DNA from: Paramoeba atlantica
Taxonomy: Eukaryota; Protista; Discosea
Length of the DNA: 64,000 nt
Direction: 5' to 3'
Assembly (NCBI GenBank): GCA_977017575.1
Contig: CDRNVI010000066.1
Location: 248,001 to 312,000 of the forward strand
Shown here: positions 11,340-58,395 of the stretch, in pieces
Layout of the letters: each line of letters starts with the position of its first letter
Numbering within the stretch: the stretch's first letter is position 1
Program-made: the position numbers and the translations under genes
Notes under the pieces: model-generated
Database searches by the model: none
What the model saw: the letters and a program-made list of their open reading frames with translations, nothing else
Told to the model about the DNA's origin: nothing

Positions 11340-11783
11340 CGAAGGGAAGTGTTAGAAGAAGAAGAGAGAAGAAGACACGGAGGGCTCTGCAGCGCCAACC
11401 GTTAGGGTAGAGTCTCAGGTCACCGACCTTCATTGTCTTGCTACCCCCTTCCCAGACGGCACTCGACGCTTTGCGGCCCGAGCACGGCTACCCAACCGTA
11501 GCTACCAGGACGGGCGTCCAACCCCGTTGCATCGTGTAGGCTGTGACTCAAGCCTCCTTTGCGTAAGCAGCTCGCAATTTAGCGGCTGCGCTGGAGCCTG
11601 GTTCAGCTCGGCGGTGCCGGGTCGGTCCTCCAGGGGAGCGGGGTTGGGTGTGGGCCTTGAAGGCACTCCTGATCAGTTTCCCTTTGTAGTGAGGCCGCCA
11701 GGTTGCGAGTTTTGTCGATAGCGGGAATCGAACCAACAACCTGCAGGTTGGAAGGCCCACCGTCTACCAACTACGCCCGCACC
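11340..11783 (-). mobile_element. tRNA-Gly(TCC)-derived SINE-like element
   Basis: Head at 11783-11716 reads GGTGCGGGCGTAGTTGGTAGACGGTGGGCCTTCCAACCTGCAGGTTGTTGGTTCGATTCCCGCTATCG, with A box, CTTCCAA loop and B box GGTTCGATTCCC but broken stems. A ~300-nt GC-rich structured body and a (CTT)-rich tail follow. Confidence 0.6.
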
Positions 11784-12298
11784 ATTAGAGTGTGCAAGTG
11801 TTAGAGTACGCCGCGGCGATAATTCCCCCCCATTGGGGGTGACCCCCCCTGGTACGCGCAGGAGGGGCGCGACAAGTTCGAAATTTCAAAAAAAATCCAA
11901 AAGAAAAGTAAAAGATTATTTTTACGGAGCGAATGTGGAGCGTGGTTGCGGGGTTGGATGGACTGAAAATCAACGCACTCATGAACAAAAAAGCACCTTT
12001 CTCTCCCAAAAAATATACCCCCTCAGTAACAAGGATTTGATCCATTTGGATCCAAAATCGATTCTATTACTGGAGGGGTATATAACCACCAAATCAAAAA
12101 AAGCACGCCGCTTCGCAGCGCGGGGCAGGTTCCAAAAATAAAGTACGCCTCAAAAGGACGAAACCCCTGCGATCGGCAGAATATGGCAGAATAGTGCCGC
12201 ATTAGCGGTGGCCCCCCTCCTATCCCCCTATTTTTTCCTATCAAATTCTCTGACTGTAGAAAATGTTTCTCCAGAGATTTTTTCTCCAGAGATAAACG

Positions 12299-12804
12299 GG
12301 GTACGTCTCTACTTCGTTGAATATTCAACGAACGGGATTTTAATTTTTTTTCGAGCTAGCGTTCGATTTTTTTAACATTTTAAATTATCTCAACGGAGCA
12401 ACAAAGGTAGCGCATGGTACTAGAAACTCTTTTTCGGCAAGTCGATCTCATGTATTTGATCTCATGTATTTGTCGATCTTATGTATTTGGTTTTGCCTCC
12501 AGAAGTGGGCTTCGCTCAAAGTTGGGCCTTGCCTCTGGACAATCCTGCGGAAGTGGCAGACATAGGCTCTCAGTGCGCGACCCGCGCGCTGGAGCGAGCG
12601 GGTCGCCAAAAAATATAATTATGTCCCAGGGCTACGCTCACAGTTGGGCCTTGCTCGCAGACGGGAGCTTTTGCCTCCAGAAGTGGGCTTCGCTGGCAGA
12701 ATCCTAGAAAATTTCGGCGAAAAAAAACAAAAAAATCGGTTTCTTGAATCGTTCAACGAACCGACGGCGCTTCGTTGAATATTCAACGAAGTAGAGACAT
12801 AGCC
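12299..12804. mobile_element. MITE / non-autonomous DNA transposon (506 bp), short member of the 57-58 kb family
   Basis: TIRs GG(G/C)TA(C/T)GTCTCTACTTCGTTGAATATTCAACGAA; 8-bp TSD GATAAACG at 12291-12298 and 12805-12812; internal sequence matches 57329-58253. Confidence 0.92.
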
Positions 12805-13477
12805 GATAAACGTACAGCTGTATGTAAACAAATGTCAGAAAAATACTTTCAATGCACGTAAAATATCATAAGGCAACATTTAGAACACATAAAAAAATTA
12901 ACAAAAAAAATTACTTTTTATGTGAAATAATGCTTCACTTTTTCTCTATTCAGCCGATTAATTCTACGGCGTACAATTTTTAATTCGAGATGAAACTGTG
13001 GTAAATGCATACCCATCACCGCTGACGCAAAAATCATTCGACCCACCGCTGACTCCAAAGAACCATACTGTAGCAAAATCGTCCTGCGTTAGACGGCGCG
13101 TTAATTTTGGACCTAACGATACCTTTCCTAGGCCATGGTGATACGTGATACCATTAAACGTGTAGGTCTGCGATGGAGGGGCTCCGGCATCCTTAAAACG
13201 CGCATTGACTTCCCTAGCCCGGTTGTCTACGAACCTGACGTATTGTTCAGCGATCACTTCGCTCCCCGCAAAACGGATACCATCTATATAAACATCGGCA
13301 TTATCTGAAGAAAACGCGGCATCCGCGGTACAAAATTGCTTATCCCCTGCCAGCGTCGCTGTTAGTACATGCATTGTTTCGGGTGCACACCGATGCCCCA
13401 TAGGCATTACATTCATTTCAAACAAATCGCCTTTCGCATCCTTAAATCGAAACTTCTCTCTACATGCTAAAGGAATA

Positions 13478-27516: not shown

Positions 27517-28194
27517 TTTCTGTACCTTGTTGACTTTTTCTTTACTACTACTTTAAACTCTTTTATGTCAGTTCCTTCCTCGCGGGCGGCGCAACGTACG
27601 CCGTCGGAGAATCGGCAGACCACTGCAACTGTTAGGAGCACTGGCGTACAGGAGAACAACTTGAACTTCACCGAAGAAGCGAATAGACATGAGATTGGTT
27701 CATGGGACCAGTTCAAAGCCAACGACAAACTCATTAAAGCAACCAGCAACTACGACGAACTCAAGTACACGACCTCCATTCCACAACATATACCCCAGCA
27801 CTGGGCAGAGAAATCAGAGAAAGCCGCTCTCAGCATCGAGAAAAATCCAATCGCAGATACCGGCCAACACAAAGAGTACGGCGAAGAGGCTACTTTCGCG
27901 AGTGTTCAAAGAAACAAAAGCTCAGATCAAGCTCTATCAGACCCCTCCGCATTTAAAATAAAGATCAGAAAAGAAAATACCACACATAAAAACAAAATCC
28001 GCCGCCAAATGGCGGGGGCCGGTGGGTGGGTAACTCGTAGTACTTAGCAAAACTTGAAGACTACTATCAAAATATATAAAATATTTATTTCCATGTATCA
28101 CTATAGAAACTATTCATAAATAAAACGTACAATGCCCGTCGGCCAATTTTCATCACTATAAAGCCCCTCCTAAATTTTCTTCCGTGAACTTCTA
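27517..28194. mobile_element. Composite insert: SL-headed orphan ORF (+) fused to the inverted spacer/A2 end of a family-B VIPER-like element
   Basis: SL remnant 27517-27532, ATG 27565; 28030-28194 is the reverse complement of 52438-52601; 27998-28030 resembles the B-spacer at 37836-37870. Host RLE reads GEI|..DVTVVH across it. Confidence 0.75.
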
Positions 28195-37254: not shown

Positions 37255-38929
37255 TAATGTTCAATAAAATAAAATCATATATTTCGTCTGAACGATTACC
37301 TGACTTTCCGAGTATAATTACTAACACAAGTTTACATTTTTGTCATTGTGATATTTGTCCTTCAGGAAAATAACCATAAAGTAAAGTGCTCAGTTTGCGT
37401 TTACTGGGAAAGATTAGTTGTGTTAATAAAACCGTTTAAGGAAAGATTAGTTACTTAGTCCGCCTATCCAGTTGCAGTGTGGGATCACGTCTCTTAGTTG
37501 GCATACAACTGTGTATGCATTGAATTTTTCAACAACTAGTCGGAAGGCATCGCGTGTGTCTTTAGGATTGAGGTGTGCCCGTGCTGCTAAAACAGAGATG
37601 AAATCCACGGCGAGGGCATCCGACCATAACAGAAGACAAGTAATCTTAATCTCAAATACTAGGTAAATATATATATCGTGTCTCAGATCCGTTTCTCGTT
37701 ATGCTATAAACGCTTCATATCTGAATAAGTTGTTCATATTGATTAACTGAGCGCTTCATCACTTTATCAAATGGGCCCTTGGTACCTTACTCTATAGAAT
37801 GTAAATACTTTGTGAAGGGGCTTAGCCCTCCCACGCTCCGCAGCCGTGGCTGGGGGTTGGTGGGTGGGCTTCGAAAACGTGTAGTACAGTAGTTAGAAAT
37901 GGATAGCCTCTAAACAAATCAATAAAATGTTTTGTTACTACATTAAATGCTTTGATTATAAAGAAGAGCGTACAATGCCCGCCGGCCATATCAGCATATA
38001 ATAGGAAAACATATATAGAAAAAAGCCCTCGCCTAAATTTCTTACCGTAAACTTTTAGAAATCCACGGCGAGGGCATCCGACCATAACAGAAGACAAGTA
38101 ATGTTAATCTCAAATACTAGGTAAATATATATATCGTGTCTCAGATCCGTTTCTCGTTATGCTATAAACGCTTCATATCTGAATAAGTTGTTCATATTGA
38201 TTAACTGAGCGCTTCATCACTTTATCAAATGGGCCCTTGGTACCTTACTCTATAGAATGTAAATACTTTGTGAAGGGGCTTAGCCCTCCCACGCTCCGCA
38301 GCCTCCAACCCGCTCACACGTAACTCTTGAATTCCTTGTCTCGCGTACCATGAGTCTTCAGTCAGTGTCCTCGCTTATAAATATCCTCGGTTGTCGTACA
38401 CAGTATCCTTGCTTATAAAAGGGTATCCTCGCTAGTAAGTAATCTCACTCCGGCTATAATAAGAGAACTTCGGCGAATACTAAGGGAGAAAGTTAGAAGG
38501 TTGACCGGACCTTCGAAATTTCCTGAAACTAAATGAAACTAATAGAAAAACGTTTTTTGTTTTTTTTTTGATGATTCTACATAAAATTTTTTTTTTTTTT
38601 GCAATTAATAAGGGGGGAGAAGTATGAATCGCGGCATTGCCTCTATATTTTGACCCAGTAGACGAACCAAGTAGGTCCATTGGGGGGGGGTATACGAGTT
38701 GAAAACAAGCAATCGAATTAGCAATTTGAAAATTTAGCTTTTTTTTTTTTTTACTAAAAACTAGCAAACAATTCTACCCGAAATCCACCCCTAATCAAAT
38801 CACTCCCGCACCAAAACTAAGACCCGTGACGGCACGTCGGTTAGTGACTTGGTACCCCCCCTTGCCCCCCCCCTTTCTTTTTTTTTTATCTATCTAGAGA
38901 TTATTCACCATCGTGCGCTTAATCAGCGC

Positions 38930-41847
38930 TCAAAACTCGCGACTAATGGGATCCGCTGGATTAAGTTTCGTCGAAATGTAATGGGCTTGAATGCATAGAT
39001 TGCGCTTTTTGGCCCATTCCAACACTTGGCACAGCTCGGGTGCTATTCTGTCAGATTTACATATTCGACGATTTAAAGCTGCCTTGCATGACGTGTTGTC
39101 AACCCATAATTGAAGACACGTGTCACTGTCGAGTTTATCTGCAAATTTCTCTAATGCCAGGCGCACTGCCATGGCTTCAGCTTTGTTTACCTCATAAACG
39201 AGTCCTGGTTCCCATGGACTTCCGACAATATAAACCTCCCTGTATCCAGATAGAGGATTGCTCCCCAACCTTTAGATGATGCATCGGTATACAATTTGTG
39301 TCGTGATGGTAAAAAATCGGGATGTGGAGAAGGATCGACGGGTGCGTTCTTCAATAATTCGTTACGCCACTCTCCTAACTTCGAGCGAATCTTGCCCGGG
39401 AGGTCCACACGGGTATTCGCTACACCCGGAACGCGGTTCAGAAGATTGATCCGGCGTTGACATACCTTTAATGCGAAATGATATTTTGGAATAATGATAC
39501 CTAAAATCGCGGAGCAGTACATGAGGCGCCCCACCGCCGCCTCCAGCTCCACAAACGTCGCACTAAAGAACGAGTCCTCCTGTAGTTTACGCAACACTTT
39601 GGGTCCCAGGCTGACCCTGTGAGTGTCATGGTTATAATGCGCTCCATTGAAAACATACTTCGTCACAGGTAGCGCACCGGCATCTTTGAATTTCGCTCCA
39701 ACACTTTCAGCTCGGCGATCGACCCATGTAGAATATCGCAACGCGTCCCGCGTCGCACAGGCAAATCTAACTCCATCGACGTACACGTCGATATTGCCTT
39801 GATTGAAGGCCCCCGTTTTTTGACAATAATCACCAGATCCAGCTATTGCCGACATAACGGAATGCATGATTTCCGGGGCACATCGATGCCCCATCGGTAA
39901 AACGCACATTTCGTACACTTCGCCCTTTTCATCCAGAAACCGAAACTTTTGGCGACATTCGTGTGGTATCGCGATTTGATAAAAGCCGCAAGTCAGATCT
40001 CTTTTCAGGCCGGAACTTTCTTTCACGCGGTGTAAGTATTTTGAAGGATGCATCAAAGGAACATGTGGTTCGTAATCCTGGAGACGCGTGTTATCGGACT
40101 TCGTCCATGAAATGAATCGTCGCCGCTGGTTTCCTTCATCGTCGGATTCGATAACAGTAAAAGGTATAAGATATTGCATCGATGGCCGAAGTTCAACATC
40201 CTCAGGCGATAACTTGGAAATTACCTTGTATTCCGTTAACAATTTAAAATCGGCTTGAGACAACCCGCTCTTCACAGCAGGGGGTTCGTCAGGCTGAATT
40301 GGTATCCGCAGTAGTTCTTGCCAGACGTCCGTAAGTCTATTTTTAGCGGTCGAAGACATCCATTGACGCACCTTTTCCATATCAAGTGTTGGAACGTTCG
40401 GTTTCACATGTAGTGGAATGGCTAGATCTTGACCCTTCGCCAACTTGGAGCTACATCGCGTGCAAATCAATGAATGCCGTTTCAAATACGGTACCTGTTT
40501 GAAACATTCCTGAACAATGTCGGGAGTCAAAGACCTGGAAGTACTGCGGATACTCGCTGTGTACCCAGCGCTTTTGCTGTTGTAATCTGACTTGCGTTGT
40601 ACCTCAACAGGCTTTCGAGATTGAGATGTTTGGTCAGGTTCTGTATCTCCGACAAGAGTAGGTGGCCGTCGGCCACTTTTTGGAAGAGAAACGTTATCGC
40701 GCCCCGCTTGATAGAGTGGGTGCCATATCCGCTTCCGAGGACGTCTCTTATTTGGTAGTCCATCTCCCTTACAGGAGTTCTGCACAACTTTTGGTTGAAG
40801 GGAAGACCCTCTAGATATCGCGCCAACTGCTCCGTCCCCGGTCCCGTTATCACAGCGTGCATGTATGGACGATAAGGGTTTAGCCTTGTCGCCTTGGTAC
40901 CTCGTCCCCAAAAGATGATTATTTCTTGAGGCGAGATCTTGAGAAATTTCTCTCTGCTTAATTCTGACACTTCCGTCCACCTTGCGGCCGCCTTCCAGCA
41001 GAGCAAGGTCGCCATTGCCTCCGAATTTGTCAATCTGCTGCACAGCTTTATTAGTAGATACGGCGTCAGTGGTTCCATTTGGCGCTGCGATTCCAGCCCT
41101 CCCTGCGCTTGTAGGGCTTTTGCGTACAACTTTAGTGGAGCGTTGCTTCCACTTACGTGCGCGTAAATGGTTTGGAGAGCACGAGTGTACGTCAGACGAG
41201 TTGTTACGGCGATCTGTAGAGATTCGAGGAAGAGAATACAGTTTAAGGCCGTCGGGGGAAGATCCCTTTGAGCGCAAAACTGATGCAGGCGAGCCCATAT
41301 CCGCTCCCTTGTGCACCACGTCGCATTCGCCCACATTGGCAAAACGGCGCGTTGGAGGTCGAGCGCGTGTGTATGCTGGGCATCGATCCCTAGCATTTGA
41401 TTCCTTAATGTTATTCGACGGACTTTCGTTCCTGGTAGTTCGTGTTCTTCCTCTCGTTGGCTCAGTGGCTTCATTCGCTTCGGTCCGGTCGTTCTGACTG
41501 GTGTACCCACCTGTGGTTGACCTTGGGAATACGTCACGAGTAACGGATTCTTGCTTACGTGTGTTTGTGCAACGAGTGTGTGGACATATCTTACCCCGTT
41601 CCAGACATAGGGTTGATATGCAGTTAAGGAAAAGCCTGGTAAGTTCGCCCGCTGTCGCCGCAAGACATGGGCACGAGTAGCAATTTTCGGGGTGGGGAGC
41701 ACTTCCTAGTGAAGCGCTCTTCTTTCGGCACGACCATAGCTCGCCGGAGCCCTCATGCCGCCACTCGCCACCCCCCGATGAAAATCCTGCTGCTTTAAGC
41801 GTGGGCAATTGACGCGTAAATGCCCAGGCATACGACAGTTGTAACAA
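38930..41847 (-). CDS. RT-RNase H (long ORF overlapping YR; frameshift near 39260 in RH)
   Basis: LKRDLTCGFYQI, LPMGHRCAP, VYVDGVRF; RH YTDASSKGWG, then in the next frame NKAEAMA, WVDNTS, NPADPISR. The N-terminal part of the ORF is probably not translated as RT. Confidence 0.85.
40527..41702 (-). CDS. Tyrosine recombinase
   Basis: CWKAAARWTE, GYGTHSIKRGA, LTKH, LLRY: R-H-R-H-Y catalytic set. The start codon is uncertain. Confidence 0.9.
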   Translation of the reverse strand: MLPTPKIATRAHVLRRQRANLPGFSLTAYQPYVWNGVRYVHTLVAQTHVSKNPLLVTYSQGQPQVGTPVRTTGPKRMKPLSQREEEHELPGTKVRRITLRNQMLGIDAQHTHALDLQRAVLPMWANATWCTRERIWARLHQFCAQRDLPPTALNCILFLESLQIAVTTRLTYTRALQTIYAHVSGSNAPLKLYAKALQAQGGLESQRQMEPLTPYLLIKLCSRLTNSEAMATLLCWKAAARWTEVSELSREKFLKISPQEIIIFWGRGTKATRLNPYRPYMHAVITGPGTEQLARYLEGLPFNQKLCRTPVREMDYQIRDVLGSGYGTHSIKRGAITFLFQKVADGHLLLSEIQNLTKHLNLESLLRYNASQITTAKALGTQRVSAVLPGL

Positions 41848-42740
41848 ACTGGAGGCTGAGTAGACCGAATGCGGCGTTTTTGTTTCGAGGTTTCTTCCAT
41901 CATAATCCGGCCGTAAGTGTCCTCAGGATTCTTTACCTGGTGAAGTCTCTGCTGCACTTTTTCAACCGGAGCACCCACGGCGGCCCAATAGTGGTTTCTC
42001 AATTCTTCGATGATGATCTTTGCAATATTGTAAAAGTTTTCGTCTGTCCAATCTTGGAGTTTCCGGGCAGCATAAATCCATTGCACGAGCATCTCAAACA
42101 GTCTTTCCCGAACAAGTGGAGGGTTGAATCGAACCCCAAATTCTTTGGTATCTCGGAGCTCGCGGACCAGCTCGCGGGGTTTAAACTCGTCTTCTGCCTC
42201 AATCCAGGGACCCCACGTTTTAGGTTCGATTGGTGAGAAATTCTTCGGGTCGGATACAGTCATTCTTTCCAGAGAGGGTAGATGTTCAACGCGCTCGCCC
42301 CCAGGCATTTGAGCTTGCACTTTGGCGATCGCCAGCGAGAAATAATCAATATCCGGAAAAGGAAAGCTGTACTCCATATCAGCTTCGTCTTCCCAGCGCG
42401 CCTTCAATTCCGAGCGATCGGGATCGTTGGGATGCTTAAAGTACACTCTGCCGGTTACGGTATATCGTTCGGTCTCATCTCGGTGTCCCCATATCGCCTG
42501 AATCCAGACCTTGTGCCCGCGGGACAGTAGTAATCGCATCTTATGGGCAAATTCGTACTTTGCTTCTTCCGTCATCGGCGGCGGGACCTCATTCTGCAGG
42601 AGGGCCTCAACCTGGTCGGGGTTAAGGGTGCCTCCACGCCTACCACTACGCGGAATCGGGGGTTCGGGAGCCTGAGGCTCAGGGCTGTTGGCTCGAGAGC
42701 GGGATATTGCCCTTGTAACGGCTTGCACGATTCCAGACAT
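41706..42740 (-). CDS. Gag-like protein (344 aa)
   Basis: ATG directly after A1; C-terminal CYNCRMPGHLRVNC knuckle; N-terminus homologous to 52661 and 56506. Confidence 0.88.
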   Translation of the reverse strand: MSGIVQAVTRAISRSRANSPEPQAPEPPIPRSGRRGGTLNPDQVEALLQNEVPPPMTEEAKYEFAHKMRLLLSRGHKVWIQAIWGHRDETERYTVTGRVYFKHPNDPDRSELKARWEDEADMEYSFPFPDIDYFSLAIAKVQAQMPGGERVEHLPSLERMTVSDPKNFSPIEPKTWGPWIEAEDEFKPRELVRELRDTKEFGVRFNPPLVRERLFEMLVQWIYAARKLQDWTDENFYNIAKIIIEELRNHYWAAVGAPVEKVQQRLHQVKNPEDTYGRIMMEETSKQKRRIRSTQPPVCYNCRMPGHLRVNCPRLKQQDFHRGVASGGMRAPASYGRAERRALH

Positions 42741-43848
42741 TCGAAAACGTGTAGTACAGTAGTTAGAAATGGATAGCCTCTAAACAAATCAATAAAATGT
42801 TTTGTTACTACATTAAATGCTTTGATTATAAAGCAGAGCGTACAATGCCCGCCGGCCATATCAGCATATAATAGGAAAACATATATAGAAAAAAAGCCCT
42901 CGCCTAAATTTCTTACCGTAAACTTTTAGAGTCTTTTAGTGTCTTCATGGAGAAGCCCACAATCAGTCACCGCTAAGCATTTGAACGCCTCTGGTTCCAA
43001 ACCATTCTGTTCTACATACTTTTTATTTTTCCTGGCCAGTGCGTTTTCCATTAGTTGTTCAGGGGTGAACTTTGCATTTGACACCGTACAAGTATGTACA
43101 ACAGTTACATCATACAATATCTCTCCCTGGTGAGGCCACATTATTCCCAAGTCAGGACCAGAACGTATCCGACGCGCTCTACACGCATGTCGTTCAGCTG
43201 CATCTGCAGAAATACTTGCCTTGCACTTTGTGCAATAGAATGAAGCATGTACTCGAGGTTCGACCACGTGAGGGATCCCAGCCTTGGTGCATAAATCTGA
43301 AAGCAAACGGATCAGGTGTGTGTTTCTTCGTGGTGTTCATACCTGAACATTGTGCGCAGCCCGCAACATGATGAAGAAGGCCGTTTCCTTCTTGCTGTGA
43401 CCCGCATCCCGGACAATGACAAATCCCTGAGGCTTTCGGGAGTGATATCCCCAATCGCATCATTATGGAATATCGGAAAAGATGGGGATTGATGTAATCA
43501 TTAGTGGAGACCAAGTGTGAATTCGAGTCCTTTGTTCTGCTAATGACTTCACTTAATCGCTACAAACTACAAGGTGACAATTGTAATTTTCCTATACACG
43601 TATTAATCACATATGCTCTTCGGGCATATGACGCGGCAATGAAGGCAAGAACTTGCGTACTGCTTGACCCTTGGTACCGCGTTGAATATCGATGGTGAAA
43701 AATTGAGCTGAAAATGGCTAATTGTAAGATTGTTCTGGTTTGCTTGTGCTCGTTTGTACACGTTTTCTCCTAATTGCAAAAGAGGATAGGTCTCCTACCT
43801 CCATTCGCATAATCCGCGGTTTGGCCTATTCGTGATGTGGATAGATGT

Positions 43849-46816
43849 TTTCTGTACCTTGTTGAATATTTTTCGTTAAACGGTTAACTAATATGTCATC
43901 TCCTCAAGTGAGCGAGCTGATACACAACGATCGAGGAATGAATAAATCACTTTGTGTCAAAAGTAAACCAAAGAAGTTGCGTCGAATCAAAGTGATTAAC
44001 AGCGCAAAAGAGCTCTCAACGACATGGGCAGATCACGAGAATTACGATTTCCCTCCACGACACAAAATTAAGATTAGGAAATCACCAAGTTCAGACTGAG
44101 ACTCTGGCTCGGGCGGTATCTCACCTCCAGATGAACTTCCTTCTGAGGATGAACATACCAGTGCGATGTCAACGGATGGCGATGACCAGGAGGTAATACA
44201 AGAACAGGTATTTTCCAAATCTCCGGATCGTGTGTACGAAATTATCAAAGAATGGGGAAAAGGAAGCACATGTGAAATCCGTTGGGGATTCAACGAGAAA
44301 CAAGTATACGATAGCGTAGGGACGGTGACTAAGAGAACTGTACGTCGAGGGGCGGTAAAGCTCAGAATATCATACAAACCAAAAGATGCTAGTGAAGGTC
44401 CTTCAGGTTTTATCTATCTACCGCAATCTACGAAAATCAAGATTTGGTCAATACGTGAAACGAAAGTCAACAGAATCAAATCTTTAGGGGAGGCTATCGA
44501 ATCTATCGAAGAAAAGCAAAATGAAGCATCCGAATCGATAGAAGTGAGTCGTGATTTAGACCCTCTTCCAAGATTCGCGCAGATCGATCCCTCTTTTTCG
44601 GTGCACGTTGTTGCAATATTTCGTTCGATCGTTAGCGCATATCCGAAAGCCAAAACAGAGTCTGAAAAAACAATTATATGGCACAAACTGTTAAATGCGC
44701 CCCGAGATTCCTTGGCTTCGATTCATCAAAATCTCATTCGGCGCCATAGTTCAGCGAAAACACATAAGAAAGCCGGAATTGACGAGCAGAACTCAAACCT
44801 AAGCGAGAAGGAGCGCTTGGAACAAGACATCGATAGACGTTCAATCAGAAGTGCTTTGCAGGCGGGAAAAGCAAATAACGTTAGAAAGGCCACGCGCATT
44901 TTAGATAACGTATATCGAGAATCCTACCTTACTGCAGAAGAAAAATCTCGGGAACTGAAGAGACTACATCCTAACGGACCTTCCCCGCAAGGTACTGACC
45001 AAGAACTTCCTCGGATCGCAGTAGTGGAAAATTTAGAAGTGCGCCTAGCCACCGAAAAATTATCTCGAGGTGCGTCACCTGGCCCCACTGGATTCAGTGA
45101 AAGTATGCTTCGCCTCTTGGCCGAGGACGAGGAATCGTGCCTCTCCTTGTGTCACATGTTCCGAGATGTAATAAATGGTGAAGTGTCACAATGCGTTCGC
45201 ACGCGCCTTACGCGATGCAGAATGATAGCTTTGGCGAAGCCAAACAATGACATAAGACCTGTAGCGATGGGGGAAACTATTCTTAAGGTCTGTGGTTCTA
45301 TTCTTCTCCAGCGTCACGAATGTGCACTGAAATCTCTCTTCCAGCCGATTCAACGTGGTATTCTACAAAAAAGCGCATGTGAATCAATCGTTCATGAGTT
45401 GATTTCTGAATACGAAGCTGGTAGCACGATTCTCACCGTAGATTTCAAGAACGCATATAACACACCACACCGCACAGCTATTGAACAAGCCCTATTCCAG
45501 TACCCCGTCTTCAAGCACTTCTTGAGAATATTTTATCTAGAATATGGACAGCCATCGGATCTCCTTTTCTTTGCCAATAGCTCACTGTACTCTACAATCG
45601 AAAGTTCATCTGGATTTCGGCAAGGATCAGCATTATCCTCTCTGTATTTTTGCACTTTGCTACAAGGAGCTTTGAAGGAAGTCGCGGATGCGTATCCAGA
45701 AGTCACCTTACGAGCTTATCAGGATGACGTCACAATGAGTTCCAAAAATGAAGCCTCTCTAGAAGTAGCTTTCAAACATTTTCAAGAGCTTACAAAGGAC
45801 CTGAACCTGGAAATAAACTTCCACAAGTGTGAAATCTTTCAAGGATCAAAAGCACAACACTGTAAAGTTTCAGCACTTCGAGAACTGGGAGTTCAGGATT
45901 GCGTGGATACGATCAAAGTGCTTGGAGGCTACATAGGCAGCAATAAAGCAGTCGAACGGAAGCTCCTGGAAAAATTAGAAAAACACAATTGTTTATTCCG
46001 AAGACTCGGTTGCATGGGGCCAAGCAATTTGTCACTTGCTATTCTCAAGCGGTGCACGTTGCCGCGCCACGATTACCACTTGCGAGTGCATAAACCAGGC
46101 GCATCGCTCTCGTTGGCGCAAGAATTCGATAAAGAGATTCGAGGTGTTTTAAAGAGATGGTGTGGGGCGGACGACGACGCTTTGTCATTAGATTCGCTCC
46201 CTTGCAAAATGGGGGGAATAGGCATAACTTCCACGATCCTGAAACATCGTTTCCTTTTCGACCTTTCTCGCAATTCTATTGATGAGCATGTCAAAACCAT
46301 TGAAGCTCCGGTAGAATCAGAGGAAAAACGAAAAGCTAACAAGAACTCAGGGTCGCAGGGAGCGCGCACCAGCATGAAAAAAATGATGAAAAGTGAACAT
46401 GAAAAAGTAGCCGCAGAGCTGAGCGGGAATCCTCGATTCGGGAACATCATGAAAAGATCGCAAGAGTCAAATTACCATCTATTCTCGACCAGCAACTATG
46501 TGAATCCTTACCTATTTAAACAAACCCTCACGATGCGTCTAGCGATAAGACTGGAGAATGCCCCAGAAACCGTTTCGTGCCCAGGATGTGGAACCATTGA
46601 ATCACCGAGCAATATTATTCCACATGTGGCCGGCTGTTCGCGATGTGCAGGAATGAATAGCACAAGGAAACACTCACACATCGTACGGTATTTATCTAAC
46701 TTGTGTGCCAAAGCAGGGCTGCCATGCGCCATTGAGCCTCGTCTTTATTCATCCTTTTTCTGTACAAAGTGCAAATGTTCAATCTCACCCGACGCCGCAG
46801 AAAGACACCCATGTCG
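43849..46816 (+). mobile_element. CRE-clade retrotransposon (copy 3), broken in the RLE region
   Basis: SL remnant 43849-43864, ATG 43893, frameshift near 44095, RT ORF 44166-46816; breaks at HPCR into 18-bp repeats (46817-46861). Confidence 0.9.
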
Positions 46817-48098: not shown

Positions 48099-48215
48099 TT
48101 CGTATGATTGGGAGAAATCGTGGGCCGCGATCGCGTAGCTGATGTCTCGTTGGCGTGGAATCTTCTTTTCTTTTCCTGTACCTTGTTGAAAACAAACTGT
48201 ACCTTGTTGACTACC

Positions 48216-51860: not shown

Positions 51861-52129
51861 ACCGCTACGGAACTTGGCGAAAGGACGGTATGGTTATTGT
51901 GTCCAAGGGAGACTGGCGACGGGGAGGGTGCAGACTTCCCAGTCGTTAGTTCATGGTGTTTTTAGTTTAGACAGCGCGCATCATACTCGATGATTATGAA
52001 GATATTTTGAAATCTATTGTAATAGCAACAAAGATCACTATCAGATTACAACGAAACATTAAATGATTGAGATACAGTTTATTTCAATACAGTTTACTAC
52101 CTTTTTTCTATGGCGAAAAAATTACATTC

Positions 52130-52437
52130 TTTTTCAACGCTATGAGAATACCCTGGAGCCACTTTTTGCGCCAATACAGCAGGGGATAATGTCAAAAGCG
52201 GGCTGCGAGAGGATAGTGCACACCCTTCACGAAAAATATTTGACAGGCCACTCCATCCTATCCGTAGACTTGAAAAATGCGTTCAACACCCCCTCCAGGA
52301 ATGACGTCGCAAAGCATGTTTTCGGTATCGCAACGTTCCGACCCTTCCAAAGGTATTTTGCGGCTGAATATTCCGAGCAATCTCAGCTTCCCTTCTACGG
52401 CAGCGAAGGTAAATTGGTCGACACAGTATCAAGTTCC
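52130..52437 (+). pseudogene. RT fragment of the second CRE-like family
   Basis: FAPIQQGIMSKAGCERIVH, SVDLKNAFNT; ends abruptly at the VIPER A repeat. Confidence 0.8.
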
Positions 52438-53146
52438 TAGAAGTTCACGGAAGGAAATTTAGGAGGGGCTTTATAGTGATGAAAATTGGCCGACGGGCAT
52501 TGTACGTTTTATTTATGAATAGTTTCTATAGTGATACATGGAAATAAATATTTTATATATTTTGATAGTAGTCTTCAAGTTTTGCTAAGTACTACGAGTT
52601 ACGATAAAGATACAGTTTCTGTACCTTGTTGTCTTCAAGTTTTGCTAAGTACTACGAGTTATGTCTGGTATCGTTGATGCGGTGCGACGGGCGGTGTCGA
52701 TGACACGAGCTGAAAGTCCGCCTCCCGTCGCTCCTGATCCTCCTGCATCTCGACGTCGAGGGCCACGACGCGAGCGCAGGGATGGAACGCTGAATCCCGA
52801 GCAGGTGGAAGACCGCGAGACCCGTGTAATGACTGATGTCGAAAAAGGAGAGTTCCAAGCTCGAATAGTTGATATTTTGCGAGCGAAGCGAAAGGTTAGG
52901 ATCAAGGCTGTGTGGGCGGAGCAGGGGGATGGTTTTCAGCAGGTCGTCGAAGGGTCAGTCTCTTTTAAGTTCCCCAAAAAACGAAACAATGATGAGTTGG
53001 TTGCAAAGTGGGATGACGAACCTAACAAAAGCTACCCTTTTCCTCATCCGCGAATTCGATATTTTGCCCTTGAGATCGTGCAGGTTGATAGCTGTATGCC
53101 GGACGGTATTGAAGACGGTTCCCTCGCGGCTCAGCAGGCGCAGATC
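52438..53146 (+). mobile_element. 5' end of family-B VIPER-like element: A repeat + SL + duplicated 5' UTR + gag N-terminus
   Basis: A repeat 52438-52601, SL 52601-52631, repeated 29-nt UTR 52632-52660, ATG 52661 (MSGIVDAVRRAVS..TLNPEQVE). Confidence 0.88.
52601..52631 (+). other. Spliced-leader exon copy (31 nt, 5'-truncated)
   Basis: ACGATAAAGATACAGTTTCTGTACCTTGTTG, identical to 56438-56468; shares GATACAGTTTCTGTAC with trypanosomatid/bodonid SLs; joined at the AG acceptor seen at 52570-52571. Confidence 0.85.
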
Positions 53147-53795
53147 AAGAACGCATATAACACACCACACCGCACAGCTATTGAACAAGCCCTATTCCAG
53201 TACCCCGTCTTCAAGCACTTCTTGAGAATATTTTATCTAGAATATGGACAGCCATCGGATCTCCTTTTCTTTGCCAATAGCTCACTGTACTCTACAATCG
53301 AAAGTTCATCTGGATTTCGGCAAGGATCAGCATTATCCTCTCTGTATTTTTGCACTTTGCTACAAGGAGCTTTGAAGGAAGTCGCGGATGCGTATCCAGA
53401 AGTCACCTGACGAGCTTATCAGGATGATGTCACAATGAGTTCCAAAAATGAAGCCTCTCTAGAAGTAGCTTTCAAACATTTTCAAGAGCTTACAAAGGAC
53501 CTGAACCTGGAAATAAACTTCCACAAGTGTGAAATCTTTCAAGGATCAAAAGCACAACACTGTAAAGTTTCAGCACTTCGAGAACTGGGAGTTCAGGATT
53601 GCGTGGATACGATCAAAGTGCTTGGAGGCTACATAGGCAGCAATAAAGCAGTCGAACGGAAGCTCCTGGAAAAATTAGAAAAACACAATTGTTTATTCCG
53701 AAGACTCGGTTGCATGGGGCCAAGCAATTTGTCACTTGCTATTCTCAAGCGGTGCACGTTGCCGCGCCACGATTACCACTTGCGAGTGCATAAAC
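53147..53795 (+). mobile_element. Internal CRE RT segment, near-identical to ~45447-46095
   Basis: Same sequence apart from TTA>TGA at ~53408 and one silent change; fused in frame to the gag upstream. Confidence 0.9.
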
Positions 53796-54278
53796 CCCCT
53801 TTTTGTTTATTACCCCCTTTTTGTTTATTACCCCCTTTTTGTTTATTACCCCCTTTTTGTTTATTACCCCCTTTTTGTTTATTACCCCCTTTTTGTTTAT
53901 TACCCCCTTTTTGTTTATTACCCCCTTTTTGTTTATTACCCCCTTTTTGTTTATTACCCCCTTTTTGTTTATTACCCCCTTTTTGTTTATTACCCCCTTT
54001 TTGTTTATTACCCCCTTTTTGTTTATTACCCCCTTTTTGTTTATTACCCCCTTTTTGTTTATTACCCCCTTTTTGTTTATTACCCCCTTTTTGTTTATTA
54101 CCCCCTTTTTGTTTATTACCCCCTTTTTGTTTATTACCCCCTTTTTGTTTATTACCCCCTTTTTGTTTATTACCCCCTTTTTGTTTATTACCCCCTTTTT
54201 GTTTATTACCCCCTTTTTGTTTATTACCTCCTTTTTGTTTATTACCCCCTTTTTGTTTATTACCCCCTTTTTGTTTAT
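53793..54278. repeat. 18-bp minisatellite ACCCCCTTTTTGTTTATT, ~27 copies
   Basis: Nearly perfect tandem array. Confidence 0.97.
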
Positions 54279-54957
54279 CCTAACTGGGTCGCCACTGCCA
54301 CGGCATATCCTTTTGGGTGCGTCAGAAGGGGAAGATGAGGTCAGGAGCCCGGCATTGGACCGTTGCCGGTGATGGGGCGTGGCGACCCCAGCCTTCCGAC
54401 GTAAGGGTTTCCGAGCTGGCAGGAGGGAATGTGTCCGTTCCTATTCCTGTTCAACCCTTGTTCGCGGCGTCGTTAACCGCGTTCCGGGGCATAGACGGGG
54501 TAGCATCCCGTCGCCGAGGCATGTATGTCGTTAGCGAGCGCGCTAACCCTACCCCCTCGGTGGAGGTGGAACGGCATTGGTGCTAGCTGAGGTTTTATCC
54601 CTCCCCATCTCCCGGAAAAGCGAAGGGACTAGATCCTTTTTTCTAGGCTAGGTCCTTCGTTTCTCCACGCTAGGAGCGCTCCTGGACTAACAATCCGGAG
54701 CAGTGGAGTTTTTAGCGAGTGAGCTACCAGAGTCTCTGACGCAATCCGAGATTCAACAAAACTCTGGTAAGCAAGTCTCGCACTACCCTGTAATGGGGTG
54801 TCTCCCCTGAGGTGCGTGGGTGGAAACACCCATTCATCTTGCCACTGGAAGGTGGCCAGCTCACTCGACCAAGAAAAGCCTGCCGGTTGGACACCGGGTG
54901 GCGGTCGAGGCGGTTGAGGCAAAGATTTTCTCCATGTACGAAAAAAAAAAAAAAAAA
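54279..54957. other. GC-rich structured non-coding segment ending in A17 (possible non-autonomous retroelement)
   Basis: Long stems such as CTGGGTCGCCAC / GTGGCGACCCCAG and GTTAGCG/CGCTAAC; no convincing ORF; orientation uncertain. Confidence 0.4.
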
Positions 54958-55574
54958 CGTTTTATTTATGAATAGTTTCTATAGTGATACATGGAAATAA
55001 ATATTTTATATATTTTGATAGTAGTCTTCAAGTTTTGCTAAGTACTACGAGTTACCTTCTTAATCGGTGCCCGTGGATCGGATACAAGGAGGTCAGCTTA
55101 CCTATCAAGACGCGTGCCATGCTGGCAGAATGGCGCAACGAGATTCTGAACAACGTTCCCATAGTTCCATCACCTCATCCTGACATGGCGCCGCATCAGC
55201 ATCGTCTTTATACGGATGCCTCAGCAAAGGGCTGGGGTGCTATTTTGTATCTTGATCAAGGCGAGGTCTTGATTGCCGGAGGTCCGTGGGAAAGAGGCAC
55301 TGAGTACGAGGTTAATCATGCGGAGGCAAAAGCAGTCCGCTTCGCGCTTGAAAAATTTGCGGAACATTTTCCACGAGGAACCTGCCTGGATCTATTCGTG
55401 GACAATACGTCCTGTGAGGCAGCGGTTAACCGACGTATGACCTCTTCGACAAATATTGCTCATGAATTAGAACAAGTTCATACACATTGCAAATCTCTGG
55501 GAATATGTGTACAAGCGCGATATATTCGCTCAGAAGATAACCCCGCTGATCCGATCAGCCGAATGGAAATGTGA
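54957..55574 (+). mobile_element. Deletion derivative of family-B VIPER: partial A repeat fused to RNase H
   Basis: 54957-55055 matches ~52507-52602; then LYTDASAKGWG, NHAEAKA, FVDNTS, NPADPISR. Confidence 0.85.
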
Positions 55575-56079
55575 GTTAAGATTCGGATTACGCATTTATG
55601 GAAGTGCAACAATAATAACTTAAATTGAAAAATAAAACAGTGCATACGTTTTTCGTCCGTAAGAGGAATTGGCCCTTCGTCTGTACGGTTATTTGATTCT
55701 GTTAGCAATACTACATATTGGATACTAGTGTTTGGGTGCAGTGACGTGTGCTTGGGTTCGGTTGGCGGCGGATCCGGACGGAAAACCCGTTCACTTAGTA
55801 TCATCTACAAACAATATAGTTTTTGATTTTCTCATGATATTTCTAGACAAGCGCTTATTTTTCATAGTTTGATTTGAAGGAAGAAGGTACGAAATTGTAT
55901 ATTTCATAGTACGGTTTTCACATCTACAAGAATTTAAGTAGGTTCATATTTCAGATTTTAGAAGTTGTATTTCAATGAAGTAGGTGCCCCGACGTGAATT
56001 TCCAACTAGAAATCGAGAAATTTGCAGCTTACACTGTCGTATCACAATTACGACAATACATCTCAGCAGAACAATGGCT

Positions 56080-56272
56080 AGGAGGCCTCAGCCATTGAAA
56101 AATAAAGTTCACAAAAAGAACCCTTGTCAAGACCGCTTATTTTCCTCTGCGTAAAGTGGCAACTAAAAGAACATAGGAGGCCTCAGCCATTGAAAAATAA
56201 AGTTCGCAAAAAGAAACCGTGTCAAGACCACTTATTTTCTCTGCGTAAAGTGGCAACTAAAAGAACATACCG
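56080..56272. repeat. ~96-bp tandem duplication
   Basis: AGGAGGCCTCAGCCATTGAAAAATAAAGTTC...GGCAACTAAAAGAACATA occurs twice with a few mismatches. Confidence 0.85.
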
Positions 56273-56437
56273 CAAAATAATAATAGTGAGAGATACAACA
56301 ACGCCTAAAGTCCAAAACAATCATGCGGTAAATCATTATAAGTTTACGATAAGAAATTTAGGAGACTTTATTTTGTTGATATGCAGATGGTGCCCCGAAA
56401 GGGGTCTAAACTGTTTTCAAATTCTAACGATTCTTTA

Positions 56438-56760
56438 ACGATAAAGATACAGTTTCTGTACCTTGTTGTGACATTTCCTCCTATAAACAACAAAAACGTT
56501 TTTCCATGGCAGGTATTTTGAATACCGTGCGCCGAACACTCTCTATGGGCAGACAGGACAGTCCTCCACCAGTTGATCCTAACGACCCTGTGAGCCCATC
56601 TCTCCGACAAGGACGGGACCAGAGAAACACCCTGAACCCCGAGCAAGTGGCGGCTTTGCTTCGAGGTGGGGATGGCGCGGAGGCCATGTCAGAGGAATCG
56701 AAGATGGAGTTTGCTGCAAAAGTTAAATCTTTAGTAGCTCGAGGGTACCAGGTATCTGTT
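56438..56760 (+). mobile_element. SL-headed gag 5' fragment of a third VIPER-like family
   Basis: SL 56438-56468, 37-nt UTR, ATG 56506 (MAGILNTVRRTLS..TLNPEQVAALL..EFAAKV); cut by the minisatellite. Confidence 0.85.
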
Positions 56761-58395
56761 GATCAACCTTTTTATTAAGATCAACCTTTTTATTAAGATC
56801 AACCTTTTTATTAAGATCAACCTTTTTATTAAGATCAACCTTTTTATTAAGATCAACCTTTTTATTAAGATCAACCTTTTTATTAAGATCAACCTTTTTA
56901 TTAAGATCAACCTTTTTATTAAGATCAACCTTTTTATTAAGATCAATCTTTTTATTAAGATCAACCTTTTTATTAAGATCAACCTTTTTATTAAGATCAA
57001 CCTTTTTATTAAGATCAACCTTTTTATTAAGATCAACCTTTTTATTAAGATCAACCTTTTTATTAAGATCAACCTTTTTATTAAGATCAACCTTTTTATT
57101 AAGATCAACCTTTTTATTAAGATCAACCTTTTTATTAAGATCAACCTTTTTATTAAGATCAACCTTTTTATTAAGATCAACCTTTTTATTAAGATCAACC
57201 TTTTTATTAAGATCAACCTTTTTATTAAGATCAACCTTTTTATTAAGATCAACCTTTCTATTAAGATCAACCTTTTTATTAAGATCAACCTTTTTATTAA
57301 GATCAACCTTTTTATTAAGATCAACCTTGGGTACGTCTCTACTTCGTTGAATATTCAACGAACCGCCGGCGGTTCGTTGAACGATTCAACGAAGCGATGG
57401 CGCTTCGTTGAATATTCAACGAACGGGATTTTAATTTTTTTTCGAGCGAGCATTCGATTTTTTTAACATTTTAAATTGTCTCAACGGAGCAACAAAGGTA
57501 GCGCATGGTACTAGAAACTCTTTTACGGCAAGTCGATCTCATGTAGATTTCTGTTGTTGTAGTTTAACCCGTTTGGAGATTCCTGTGAATGAATGTGAAA
57601 CGCACGGATGAAACATGGTGTTAGATACGTCGTGTATTATTAGAAAATATAGGTGCAAGAAGGCCATGAAGCGACGCAAAAATGCTTCCGAAGTATTGCC
57701 AGTATCACTGTTGTTCATTCAAAATAGGATCCGCAAAAGAAAAAGGTCCTGTTTTCTACACATCAATATTAAAAAATAGTCCAGAATCCTGCGGAAACCA
57801 CCCAACCAACCAGAATCCTGCGGAAGTGGAAGACATAGGTTCTCAGTGCGCGACCCGCGCGCTGGAGCGCGCGGGCCGCCAAAAAATATAATTATGTCCC
57901 AGGGCTACGCTCACAGTTGGGCCTTGCTCGCAGACGGGGGCTTTTGCCTCCAGAAGTGGGCTTCGCTCAACGTTGGGCCTTGCCTCTCGACAATCCTGCG
58001 GAAGTGGCAGACATAGGTTCTCAGTGCGCGACCCGCGCGCTGGAGCGCGCGGGCCGCCAAAAAATATAATTATGTCCCAGGGCTTCACTCACAGTTGGGC
58101 CTTGCTCGCAGACGGGGGTTTTGCCTCAAGAAGTGGGCTTCGCTGGCAGAATCCCAGAAAAGTTCAGTGAAAAAAAATAAAAAATCGGTTCGTTGAATCG
58201 TTCAACGAACCGACGGCGCTTCGTTGAATATTCAACGAAGTAGAGACATAGCCTCAACCTTTTTATTAAGATCAACCTTTTTATTAAGATCAACCTTTTT
58301 ATTAAGATCAACCTTTTTATTAAGATCAACCTTTTTATTAAGATCAACCTTTTTATTAAGATCAACCTTTTTATTAAGATCAACCTTTTTATTAA
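56761..58395. repeat. 18-bp minisatellite GATCAACCTTTTTATTAA (~31 + ~8 copies) interrupted by a MITE
   Basis: Arrays at 56761-57328 and 58254-58395. Confidence 0.97.
57329..58253. mobile_element. MITE / non-autonomous DNA transposon (925 bp)
   Basis: Same TIRs as 12299-12804; 8-bp TSD TCAACCTT (57321-57328 / 58254-58261); internal ~180-bp tandem duplication. Confidence 0.93.

What the first reader, a model, noticed from the sequence alone, without database searches (positions are those of the whole stretch)
52438..52660. A-SL-A' junction: a YR element copied from a trans-spliced RNA, suggesting split repeats restore the splice acceptor
Seen: the unspliced A repeat (..GATAGTAG|TCTTCAAGTTTTGCTAAGTACTACGAGTTA-C) is followed by SL|TCTTCAAGTTTTGCTAAGTACTACGAGTTA-TG, so the SL replaces everything 5' of the AG. 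The A copy ends in TTAC like the A2 form at 28030, and it starts exactly at the recombination end. Inference: trans-splicing removes most of A1 from the genomic RNA; normally a jump via the retained 29 nt to A2 rebuilds the acceptor and YR site. Here reverse transcription ran through the SL first and jumped at TTAC/TAAC microhomology.
Basis: partly seen in the sequence, partly recalled or inferred. Interest (0 to 1): 0.85.

Follow-up and report, generated by a model that had tools for sequence, protein, structure and literature searches.

The report
Spliced leader fossil inside a retrotransposon repeat
A broken copy of a tyrosine-recombinase retrotransposon carries, right after its intact left repeat, a DNA copy of its own trans-spliced and polyadenylated RNA, which shows where the element's RNA is spliced and gives a rare, though ambiguous, view of how such elements are reverse-transcribed.

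Summary
A full 165-nt A repeat (52437-52601) is followed by a 30-nt spliced-leader (SL) relic (52602-52631), a second copy of the last 30 nt of A (52632-52661), and the gag ATG. The SL replaces everything 5' of the AG at 52570-71.

A complete relative fetched from a public assembly (L003) shows the family: VIPER-like, gag, tyrosine recombinase, RT/RNase H, with repeats A1...B1-A2-linker-B2.

- The SL-headed unit is a mosaic: gag aa 1-161, a LINE RT piece, an 18-bp satellite, 660 nt unique.
- It ends in A17 at 54941-57.
- It is followed by a perfect 99-nt repeat of A plus the first linker base, then the pol 3' end, UTR and one B repeat.

The DNA was certainly copied from trans-spliced, polyadenylated RNA.

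How it was joined to A is open:
- About 0.45: reverse transcription primed at the A2/linker boundary, an end-to-end jump at a poly(A) cleavage site inside A, and a bypassed A' strand transfer.
- About 0.3: an ordinary LINE-type retrocopy with a 99-nt target duplication.

Raw reads could not test the junction. Other first-stage notes, unchecked, report similar junctions elsewhere in this genome.

The parts
52063..52436 (+). Left flank: RT domain of a diverged LINE, interrupted by the element
   Evidence: tblastx to LINE RTs at 45300-45611 and elsewhere. Logan contigs of uninterrupted copies run on past 52438 with other sequence.
52437..52601 (+). Full A repeat (165 nt), A2-type; contains the polypyrimidine tract and the AG acceptor at 52570-71
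   Evidence: Identical to L003 A2 and 98.8% to L003 A1. It begins CTAGAAG, exactly as after B1 in L003 and in a Logan contig.
52602..52631 (+). Spliced-leader relic, about nt 10-39 of the SL. The first C may instead be linker nt 1.
   Evidence: It ends at the exon end and abuts the base after the AG.
52632..52661 (+). A' : second copy of the last 30 nt of A (5' UTR of the spliced RNA); gag ATG starts at 52661
   Evidence: exact repeat; canonical A1 runs straight into the ATG.
52661..53145 (+). gag codons 1-161 of family 1
   Evidence: 98.8% to L003 8728-9244; 44% aa identity to the gag of the complete element at 42740.
53145..53796 (+). In-frame fragment of a LINE RT domain, foreign to the YR element
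   Evidence: 99.7% to window 45445-46096. Contigs of both parents diverge at 53145. AGAT microhomology at the joint.
53794..54278 (+). 18-bp tandem repeat, 27 copies
54279..54940 (+). Unique non-coding stretch. Its last 8 nt, CATGTACG, match A nt 58-66 (CATTGTACG).
   Evidence: no homology elsewhere in the window or loci.
54941..54957 (+). Poly(A) tract of 17, the 3' end of the copied RNA
   Evidence: It is the only A run of 12 or more on the + strand of the window.
54957..55055 (+). 3' 99 nt of A plus linker C; perfect direct repeat of 52504-52602
   Evidence: 100% to L003 A2 plus CC.
55056..55574 (+). 3' part of pol (RNase H), joined directly to the linker base: a circularly permuted junction
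   Evidence: 98.4% to L003 from 12053; RNase H Pfam hits; 59% aa identity to the pol of the element at 39444.
55575..55761 (+). 3' UTR that precedes B1 in the canonical element
55762..56001 (+). Single B repeat in B1 context, abutting the host; no A2-linker-B2 follows
   Evidence: 99.6% to L003 B1 and B2. It ends in the same 30 nt that precede A in Logan contigs.
56002..56333 (+). Right flank: C-terminal end and 3' UTR of a LINE. About 1.5 kb of LINE is missing between the two flanks.
27997..28194 (-).
   Evidence: 99.5% to L003 13010-13207.
37600..42930 (-). Complete related element (A1, gag, YR, RT/RH, B1, A2, linker, B2), used as the in-window reference

Best explanation
The locus is a dead, circularly permuted copy of a defective VIPER-like tyrosine-recombinase retrotransposon, made from that element's processed RNAs.

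Shown:
- The canonical element is A1-gag-YR-RT/RH-UTR-B1-A2-linker-B2.
- The copied RNA had received the spliced leader at the AG 30 nt before the end of A, so it had lost the first 135 nt of A.
- The same RNA carried a poly(A) tail.

Inferred:
1. Transcripts of a rearranged source element were processed like any polycistron. SL was added at the acceptor in A1. Cleavage and polyadenylation occurred about 70 nt upstream of the next acceptor, at nt 66 of an internal partial A.
2. Minus-strand cDNA synthesis began at the A2/linker boundary and ran back through B1, UTR, pol and the partial A to the 5' end of the downstream cleavage product (A nt 65-67).
3. It then jumped end-to-end onto the poly(A) tail of the upstream product and ran on to SL nt ~10.
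4. Normally the cDNA of the retained 30 nt (A') would pair with A2, so that the spliced-off part of A is recopied. Here the extra SL tail blocked that transfer, and the two cDNA ends (A2+C and the SL) were simply joined.
5. Integration at the B|A site then gave host | A-C-SL-A'-gag...poly(A)-A(67-165)-C-pol-UTR-B | host.
For: - The SL exon end is joined exactly to the base after the AG, next to an unspliced copy of the same acceptor.
- The canonical element and its recombinase are established.
- The left end is host|A-start and the right end is B-end|host, with B in B1 context and no A2-linker-B2. This is what a unit circle opened at the B|A junction would give.
- Two junctions use the same discrete end, A2 plus linker nt 1: A2-C|SL at 52602 and A2-C|pol 12053 at 55055/56. 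The second is a circular permutation.
- The poly(A) sits in register inside A. The 8 nt before it equal A nt 58-66 and the bases after it continue A from nt 65-67. That fits upstream and downstream products of one cleavage site being rejoined.
- A second retrocopy ends in poly(A) exactly at a B end, roughly 135 nt upstream of the acceptor by analogy with family 1. So these RNAs are polyadenylated just upstream of the A acceptor.
- All RNA parts with a terminal role are of family 1.
- Unchecked first-stage notes report similar 'SL next to its own unspliced acceptor' junctions on other pieces of this genome.
Against: - The SL...poly(A) unit flanked by a perfect 99-nt repeat is also the textbook signature of LINE target-primed insertion.
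- Long repeats around a poly(A) insert do occur here: 190 nt in L006.
- LINE-type retrocopies have hit the A2/linker boundary of another family twice.
- The unit contains LINE and satellite sequence.
- The SL relic lacks about 9 nt, so the cDNA did not reach the cap.
- The two host flanks are not contiguous: about 1.5 kb of the host LINE is missing. That is not a clean recombinase insertion.
- The postulated source locus was not found.
- No primer for the linker is known.
- Read-level support for the junction could not be obtained.
Confidence: 0.45

Rival explanations
1. Ordinary processed retrocopy. A LINE machine nicked the A repeat of a pre-existing short derivative (host|A-C-pol 3' end-UTR-B|host) between A nt 64 and 67. 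It copied a polyadenylated, SL-capped chimeric RNA, or several RNAs by template switching. It then joined the cDNA to a second nick 99 nt downstream, creating a 99-nt target-site duplication.
For: - SL relic at the 5' end, A17 at the 3' end, and a perfect 99-nt direct repeat on both sides.
- A 190-nt repeat flanks another poly(A) insert in L006.
- Two SL-headed retrocopies with 12- and 18-nt duplications sit at the A2/linker boundary of another family.
- LINE RT sequence lies inside the unit.
- SL-headed retrocopies are common in the window: 7 relics.
Against: It needs three coincidences.
1. A family-1 RNA landed in a family-1 repeat.
2. The first nick lies in register with the A-like last 8 nt of the RNA.
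3. The second nick falls within 1 nt of the pre-existing A2-C|pol junction.

It also needs two rare precursor loci rather than one. The only other clear duplication in the window is 13-14 nt.
Confidence: 0.3
2. Stepwise DNA-level history in a transposon nest: several unrelated insertions, deletions and ectopic recombinations among family-1 copies, retrocopies and LINEs. These include a cDNA of the locus's own mRNA inserted in cis, followed by a deletion. Together they happened to leave this order of pieces.
For: The region is a dense nest with many truncated elements, satellites and a host deletion. The LINE piece is closest to a copy 7 kb away: 99.7%, against 99.2% for the multi-copy contig.
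Against: The breakpoints fall at meaningful positions (A start, A2/linker boundary twice, exon end, poly(A) in register) rather than at random ones. The two A segments are 100% identical over 99 nt. The cis-insertion-plus-deletion route needs a precise 2.3-kb deletion.
Confidence: 0.15
3. Assembly or library artefact: a chimeric read or misjoin placed cDNA-like sequence next to A.
For: No Logan contig bridging 52601/02, 53145 or 54957 was listed. The window's own single-base variants are absent from the listed contigs. The ORFs of this locus are not on record in the gene collection.
Against: Logan contigs break at every repeat boundary and drop rare variants, so this is not evidence of absence. 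The joints share no long repeat that could mislead a long-read assembler. The A17 tract and the 99-nt repeat are internally coherent. Comparable structures occur in an independent public assembly (L006).
Confidence: 0.05

Closest known systems
VIPER / VIPER-like (TATE) tyrosine-recombinase retrotransposons of kinetoplastids, and SIRE (PMC6681497, PMC5814959)
   Same: - Gene order gag, tyrosine recombinase, RT/RNase H.
- Split direct repeats A1 ... B1-A2-B2.
- A short unique stretch between A2 and B2: about 30 bp in SIRE, 22 nt here.
- Solo A2-linker-B2-like remnants.
- Residence among LINE-type elements.
   Different: This is a different host and a different family: gag is 44% identical even between families within this window. 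The recombinase ORF is overlapped by the upstream extension of the RT frame. No SL relic inside a VIPER repeat, and no mapped RNA ends, were mentioned in the two papers I read.
Replication models for DIRS-1, Ngaro and PAT elements (Cappello 1985; Goodwin and Poulter 2004, as cited in PMC7192593 and PMC6681497)
   Same: The RNA lacks terminal sequence. Internal copies of the ends are used to rebuild a full element in a circular intermediate that the recombinase integrates.
   Different: In those models the RNA is short because transcription starts inside the repeat. Here the 5' loss is due to trans-splicing, with 30 nt retained. The primer and the cDNA ends are unknown for all of these elements (PMC7192593). 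This locus suggests an end at the A2/linker boundary.
Relict spliced leaders in dinoflagellate retrogenes ('mRNA recycling'; PMC6050394, PMC5585692)
   Same: A DNA-encoded SL in front of a gene marks retroposition of a trans-spliced mRNA. Stacked relics occur here too (48173-48209; L006).
   Different: The SL is of the euglenozoan type. The copied RNA is a retrotransposon's own. The relic lies beside the intact acceptor it was spliced to.
LINE-mediated processed pseudogenes and chimeric retrocopies made by template switching (my own knowledge: L1 processed pseudogenes, U6-L1 chimeras)
   Same: mRNA 5' end, poly(A), flanking direct repeat, and a mosaic of several RNAs.
   Different: The repeat is 99 nt long. 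The target and the insert are the same family and in register. One border coincides with a pre-existing permuted junction.

Membership tests
VIPER-like tyrosine-recombinase retrotransposon (order DIRS) | Encodes a tyrosine recombinase | tested here: met
   ORF2 of the canonical copy (L003 9840-10892), modelled with 8 homologues (pLDDT 69), matches Cre/Tre and Tn1549, P2 and Xer integrases: Foldseek E down to 3e-6, TM about 0.5. Conserved AARWTE, HSIKRG and LLRY motifs. The best profile hits in the PDB are P2 integrase at the catalytic Arg, E 0.5. Pfam itself finds nothing. The window copy of the finding has lost this gene.
VIPER-like tyrosine-recombinase retrotransposon (order DIRS) | Gene order gag (zinc knuckle), YR, RT/RNase H | tested here: met
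   L003: gag 8760-9836 with zf-CCHC (E 7e-7), YR 9840-10892, then RT (weak RVT_1, E 0.04) and RNase H (E 5e-4) in 10124-12571.
VIPER-like tyrosine-recombinase retrotransposon (order DIRS) | Split direct repeats A1 ... B1-A2-B2 | tested here: met
   L003: A1 8597-8760, B1 12769-13009, A2 13009-13173, linker 13174-13195, B2 13196-13436. In the window, 42930-37600 on the minus strand has the same layout. The copy in the finding has only A, a partial A and one B.
LINE-mediated processed retrocopy | mRNA 5' end and poly(A) tail encoded in DNA | tested here: met
   SL relic 52602-52631; A17 at 54941-54957.
LINE-mediated processed retrocopy | Flanking target-site duplication of a target unrelated to the insert | tested here: inconclusive
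   A perfect 99-nt direct repeat flanks the unit. However, it is part of the same family's repeat, in register with the insert's 3' end, and one border coincides with another junction. No empty site is available.
Relict-SL retrogene (mRNA recycling) | SL exon, ending at the exon-intron border, encoded upstream of a coding region at a former AG acceptor | tested here: met
   The unspliced acceptor is present 60 nt upstream and in canonical copies.
Retrovirus-like strand transfer through a terminal repeat | The same sequence at the 5' end of the template RNA and near its 3' end, used for cDNA transfer | not testable with these tools
   After splicing, the RNA would begin with A' (30 nt), which recurs at the end of A2. 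Whether it is used for transfer needs cDNA mapping or a marked element.

The most novel reading that the evidence does not exclude
VIPER-like elements replicate much like retroviruses whose LTR is B+A.
- Minus-strand DNA starts at the A2/linker boundary, with the conserved C-rich linker plus hairpin acting as a primer-binding site.
- A plus-strand 'strong-stop' DNA runs from the first base of A to B2 nt 12.
- The 30 nt of A left after trans-splicing serve as the R-like repeat for strand transfer.
- The split-direct-repeat layout is therefore a two-LTR circle opened inside an LTR.

Three aberrant junctions would be fossils of these ends: 52601/02, 55055/56 and 27997.
Probability: 0.2. Interest if true: 0.85.

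Novelty: new variant of a known kind. Interest (0 to 1): 0.6.

Why it matters
How DIRS, Ngaro and VIPER elements prime reverse transcription and rebuild their ends is still unknown (PMC7192593). In organisms with polycistronic transcription, a retrotransposon RNA is necessarily cut by trans-splicing and polyadenylation, so it cannot carry its own ends.

This locus shows directly that a VIPER-like RNA is spliced 30 nt before the end of its left repeat. It also points to discrete nucleic-acid ends at the A2/linker boundary and at a cleavage site inside A. These can be tested by cDNA-end mapping or a genome-wide junction census.

If the LINE reading is right instead, the locus is one more SL-tagged retrocopy, notable only for its long duplication.

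Tried and rejected
- Rfam scan of the window: no SL RNA gene or other family.
- Word-based protein search with the gag N-terminus: nothing. The exhaustive search with the relative's gag then worked.
- Exact-protein look-ups for the chimeric gag ORF and for a host gene: not on record.
The part beside it was laid instead. Logan contigs break at each repeat border, so the junction could not be bridged.
- Paper search for the SL string: no hit. The organism stays coded.
- Pfam, PDB sequence and Atlas searches on the long pol frame gave no recombinase. The recombinase is in an overlapping frame.
- The first AlphaFold run, with 2 sequences, was useless: pLDDT 39.
- Rejected: 'A is a primer that is extended on other templates at GAGTTA'. 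The 28030 junction proved to be native A2-linker-B2.
- Rejected: SL acquired by insertion into an SL gene. The relic ends at the exon end and is joined to an AG acceptor.
- Rejected: nick-translation of the locus by its own mRNA. This predicts the SL at the acceptor without an A' duplication.
- Rejected: homologous recombination of a cDNA. This would trim the SL and poly(A).
- A search for target duplications around the other SL-headed LINEs of the window found none.

Full report
**Observation.**
- A 30-mer (TCTTCAAG...GAGTTA) occurs at 52572-52601 and again at 52632-52661. None is expected by chance.
- The 30 nt between the two copies, 52602-52631, are the 3' part of a spliced leader (SL) with the euglenozoan core CAGTTTCTGTAC.
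- The same string precedes a second gag-like ORF at 56439-56468 and occurs in a public contig of the same organism (L003 16475-16505).
- The relic ends at the exon end (...CCTTGTTG) and abuts the base after the AG at 52570-71. The unspliced copy of that acceptor, with a T-rich tract before it, lies 60 nt upstream.
- From three longer relics and the loose ends of contigs, the SL is about 39 nt (...CTTTAACGATAAAGATACAG...). The relic here therefore lacks about the first 9 nt.

**What the element is.**
- The gag N-terminus at 52661 is 44% identical to the gag of a complete element on the minus strand at 42930-37600. That element has repeats A1 ... B1-A2-linker-B2.
- An exhaustive protein search with that gag found family-1 fragments in an ENA assembly.
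- Their contigs gave one degenerate copy (L001) and one complete copy (L003):
  - A1 8597-8760
  - gag 8760-9836 (zinc knuckle)
  - second ORF 9840-10892
  - RT/RNase H to 12571
  - UTR
  - B1 12769-13009
  - A2 13009-13173
  - 22-nt C-rich linker
  - B2 13196-13436
- The second ORF carries AARWTE, HSIKRG and LLRY motifs. Its model matches Cre and other tyrosine recombinases: E 3e-6, TM 0.5.
- The family is thus a VIPER-like tyrosine-recombinase retrotransposon, as described for kinetoplastids (PMC6681497).

**Anatomy of the copy in the finding.**

| Coordinates | Piece |
|---|---|
| up to 52436 | host LINE RT |
| 52437-52601 | full A |
| 52602 | C |
| 52602-52631 | SL relic (this C may be its first base or linker nt 1) |
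| 52632-52661 | A' |
| 52661-53145 | gag codons 1-161 |
| 53145-53796 | in-frame LINE RT piece, 99.7% to 45445-46096 |
| 53794-54278 | 18-bp satellite, 27 copies |
| 54279-54940 | 660 nt unique |
| 54941-54957 | A17 |
| 54957-55055 | last 99 nt of A plus C, 100% identical to 52504-52602 |
| 55056-55574 | pol from L003 position 12053 (RNase H) |
| 55575-55761 | UTR |
| 55762-56001 | one B repeat |
| from 56002 | host LINE C-terminus |

- There is no recombinase gene, no RT and no A2-linker-B2 at the right end.
- The left border is the normal A start.
- The right border is the normal B end, preceded by the UTR that precedes B1.
- The junction at 55055/56 joins linker nt 1 back to an upstream pol position. 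It is therefore a circular permutation of pol-UTR-B1-A2-C.

**What is certain.** The stretch from the SL to the A17 was copied from RNA that had been trans-spliced at the AG in A and polyadenylated.

- cDNA synthesis began at the A2/linker boundary.
- It ran back through B1, UTR, pol and a partial A to an RNA 5' end at A nt 65-67.
- It jumped to the poly(A) tail of the upstream RNA and ran to SL nt ~10.
- The SL tail prevented the normal pairing of the A' cDNA with A2, so the two ends were joined. A unit circle was then integrated at the B|A site.

Points in favour:
- The same end (A2 + C) is used in two junctions.
- The borders are A start and B end, with one A and one B.
- The poly(A) lies in register inside A. 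The 8 nt before it are A nt 58-66 and the bases after it continue A. This is expected if the two RNAs are the upstream and downstream products of one cleavage site about 70 nt before the next acceptor.
- Another retrocopy ends in poly(A) exactly at a B end. These RNAs are therefore polyadenylated just upstream of the acceptor in A.

**Reading 2: a LINE-type processed retrocopy with a 99-nt target duplication, inserted in the A of a short A-C-pol-UTR-B derivative.**

Points in favour:
- It shows the classic triad of mRNA 5' end, poly(A) and flanking repeat.
- A 190-nt repeat (99.5%) flanks a poly(A) insert in L006.
- Two SL-headed, microsatellite-tailed retrocopies with 12- and 18-nt duplications lie nested exactly at the A2/linker boundary of another family.
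- LINE sequence lies inside the unit.

Points against:
- It needs a family-1 RNA to hit a family-1 repeat, in register at the 3' side and within 1 nt of the permuted junction at the 5' side.
- It needs two rare precursor loci.

I put reading 1 at about 0.45 and reading 2 at about 0.3. The rest goes to stepwise rearrangement in a nest or to artefact.

**Other junctions that bear on the ends.**
- At 27997, the stretch A(nt 2)-linker-B2 nt 12 is fused to the antisense of an SL-headed copy of a cellular mRNA with an LsmAD-like motif.
- Taken with the two A2+C junctions, this would fit a minus-strand start at the linker and a plus-strand stop 34 nt further on, as in retroviruses. That is inference from three junctions only.
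- The linker (CCCRCCCACC..CCCCC) and a small hairpin at its border with B2 are conserved in four families.

**Reads.**
- Logan contigs end at 52437/38, 52601/02, 52631/32, 53145 and 53796. They show the alternative neighbours: uninterrupted host LINE, B before A, linker after A, canonical gag and LINE on either side of 53145, and a canonical A-to-gag copy that is L003's.
- No listed contig bridges the junctions, and contigs drop rare variants. The assembly of this locus is neither confirmed nor contradicted.
- No RNA evidence for the splice site was obtained.

**Comparison with what is known.**
- VIPER split repeats, and SIRE as A2 + about 30 bp + B2, are described (PMC6681497).
- The need to rebuild ends from an incomplete RNA is the core of the DIRS-1 and Ngaro models. 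The primer is unknown (PMC7192593).
- DNA-encoded SL relics mark retroposed mRNAs in dinoflagellates (PMC6050394).
- My paper searches found no report of an SL relic inside a tyrosine-recombinase element beside its own acceptor, or of mapped RNA or cDNA ends for VIPER-like elements.
- I therefore class this as a new variant of a known kind.
- Other first-stage notes of this scan report similar junctions on other pieces of this genome. I could not check them.

Noticed in passing
window 24151, 27517, 32237, 43849, 48173, 52602, 56432 (all + strand): There are seven SL relics in 64 kb, all on one strand. Four begin at the same SL position (TTTCTGTACCTTGTTG, just after the internal CAG), in front of LINE-type ORFs or an mRNA copy. 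The one at 48173-48209 is two stacked relics.
   Followed up: partly
window 27517-28194: A 664-bp insert in a LINE reads, on the + strand: SL 3' 13-16 nt, a 5' UTR, an ORF with an LsmAD-like motif (Pfam E 0.002), then the reverse complement of B2 nt 12-1, the linker and A2 down to its second base. It has no tail and no clear duplication. Its origin is unexplained.
   Followed up: partly
L006 13197-14890: Two SL-headed retrocopies with (CAA)n and (TAAC)n tails are nested at the same nick site at the A2/linker boundary of another VIPER-like family, with 12- and 18-nt duplications. The first starts with five stacked TACCTTG(C/T)TG decamers. The A end there resembles the SL (GTTTTTG against GTTTCTG).
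   Followed up: partly
L006 8317-8812: A 190-nt direct repeat (99.5%) flanks a 102-nt fragment that ends in a B-end motif followed by A14, about 50 nt upstream of a different YR element.
   Followed up: partly
L003 9840-10892 vs 9863-12571; window 40530-41702 vs 39187-41847 (minus): The tyrosine-recombinase ORF is wholly overlapped, in another frame, by the long open upstream extension of the RT/RNase H frame. That extension is a low-complexity S/R/T-rich translation.
   Followed up: partly
window 55745-55761 with L003 13174-13195; window 38310-38330 with 37846-37869 (minus): The sequence just before B1 (GGGTTCGGT; GGGTTGGAGG in the relative) is complementary to part of the linker before B2 (ACCGGCCCC; CCACCAACCC), with changes on both sides between families. 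This is a possible long-range pairing. It has not been tested statistically.
   Followed up: no
window 52488-52498; 42848-42838 (minus); 56389-56403; L005 8742-8755: There is a small GC hairpin at the same place in A in four families, with different loops (GCCC-TTCG-GGGC, CCCC-GAAA-GGGG, GGCC-GAC-GGGC). It lies a few bases upstream of the poly(A) junction site.
   Followed up: no
window 56335-56760: A third family shows about 97 nt that start like an A repeat, then a nearly full SL relic (from about nt 3), a 37-nt UTR, and a gag cut off after 85 codons by an 18-bp satellite. No copy of the UTR lies upstream of the SL, so this is not an A-SL-A' arrangement.
   Followed up: partly
window 53794-54278, 56761-57328, 58254-58395; L005 14476 onward: Related 18-bp satellites (ACCCCCTTTTTGTTTATT; GATCAACCTTTTTATTAA; TTATTAAGACAACGTTTT) sit at the truncation points of retroelement ORFs, before an APE-type LINE ORF, and at the right border of a YR element.
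   Followed up: no
window 56002-56100, 37447-37599 (minus); L001 9700-9839: Three YR elements of different families lie within about 0-130 nt of the conserved C-terminal coding end or 3' UTR of LINE copies. In L001, the 8 nt before the A start equal SL nt 16-23 (AGATACAG).
   Followed up: no
L005 8703-8960 and 13508-14212: In a fifth family, A contains a 97-nt internal tandem duplication. Its A2 is split by a SINE-like retrocopy with a (CAT)n-type tail.
   Followed up: no
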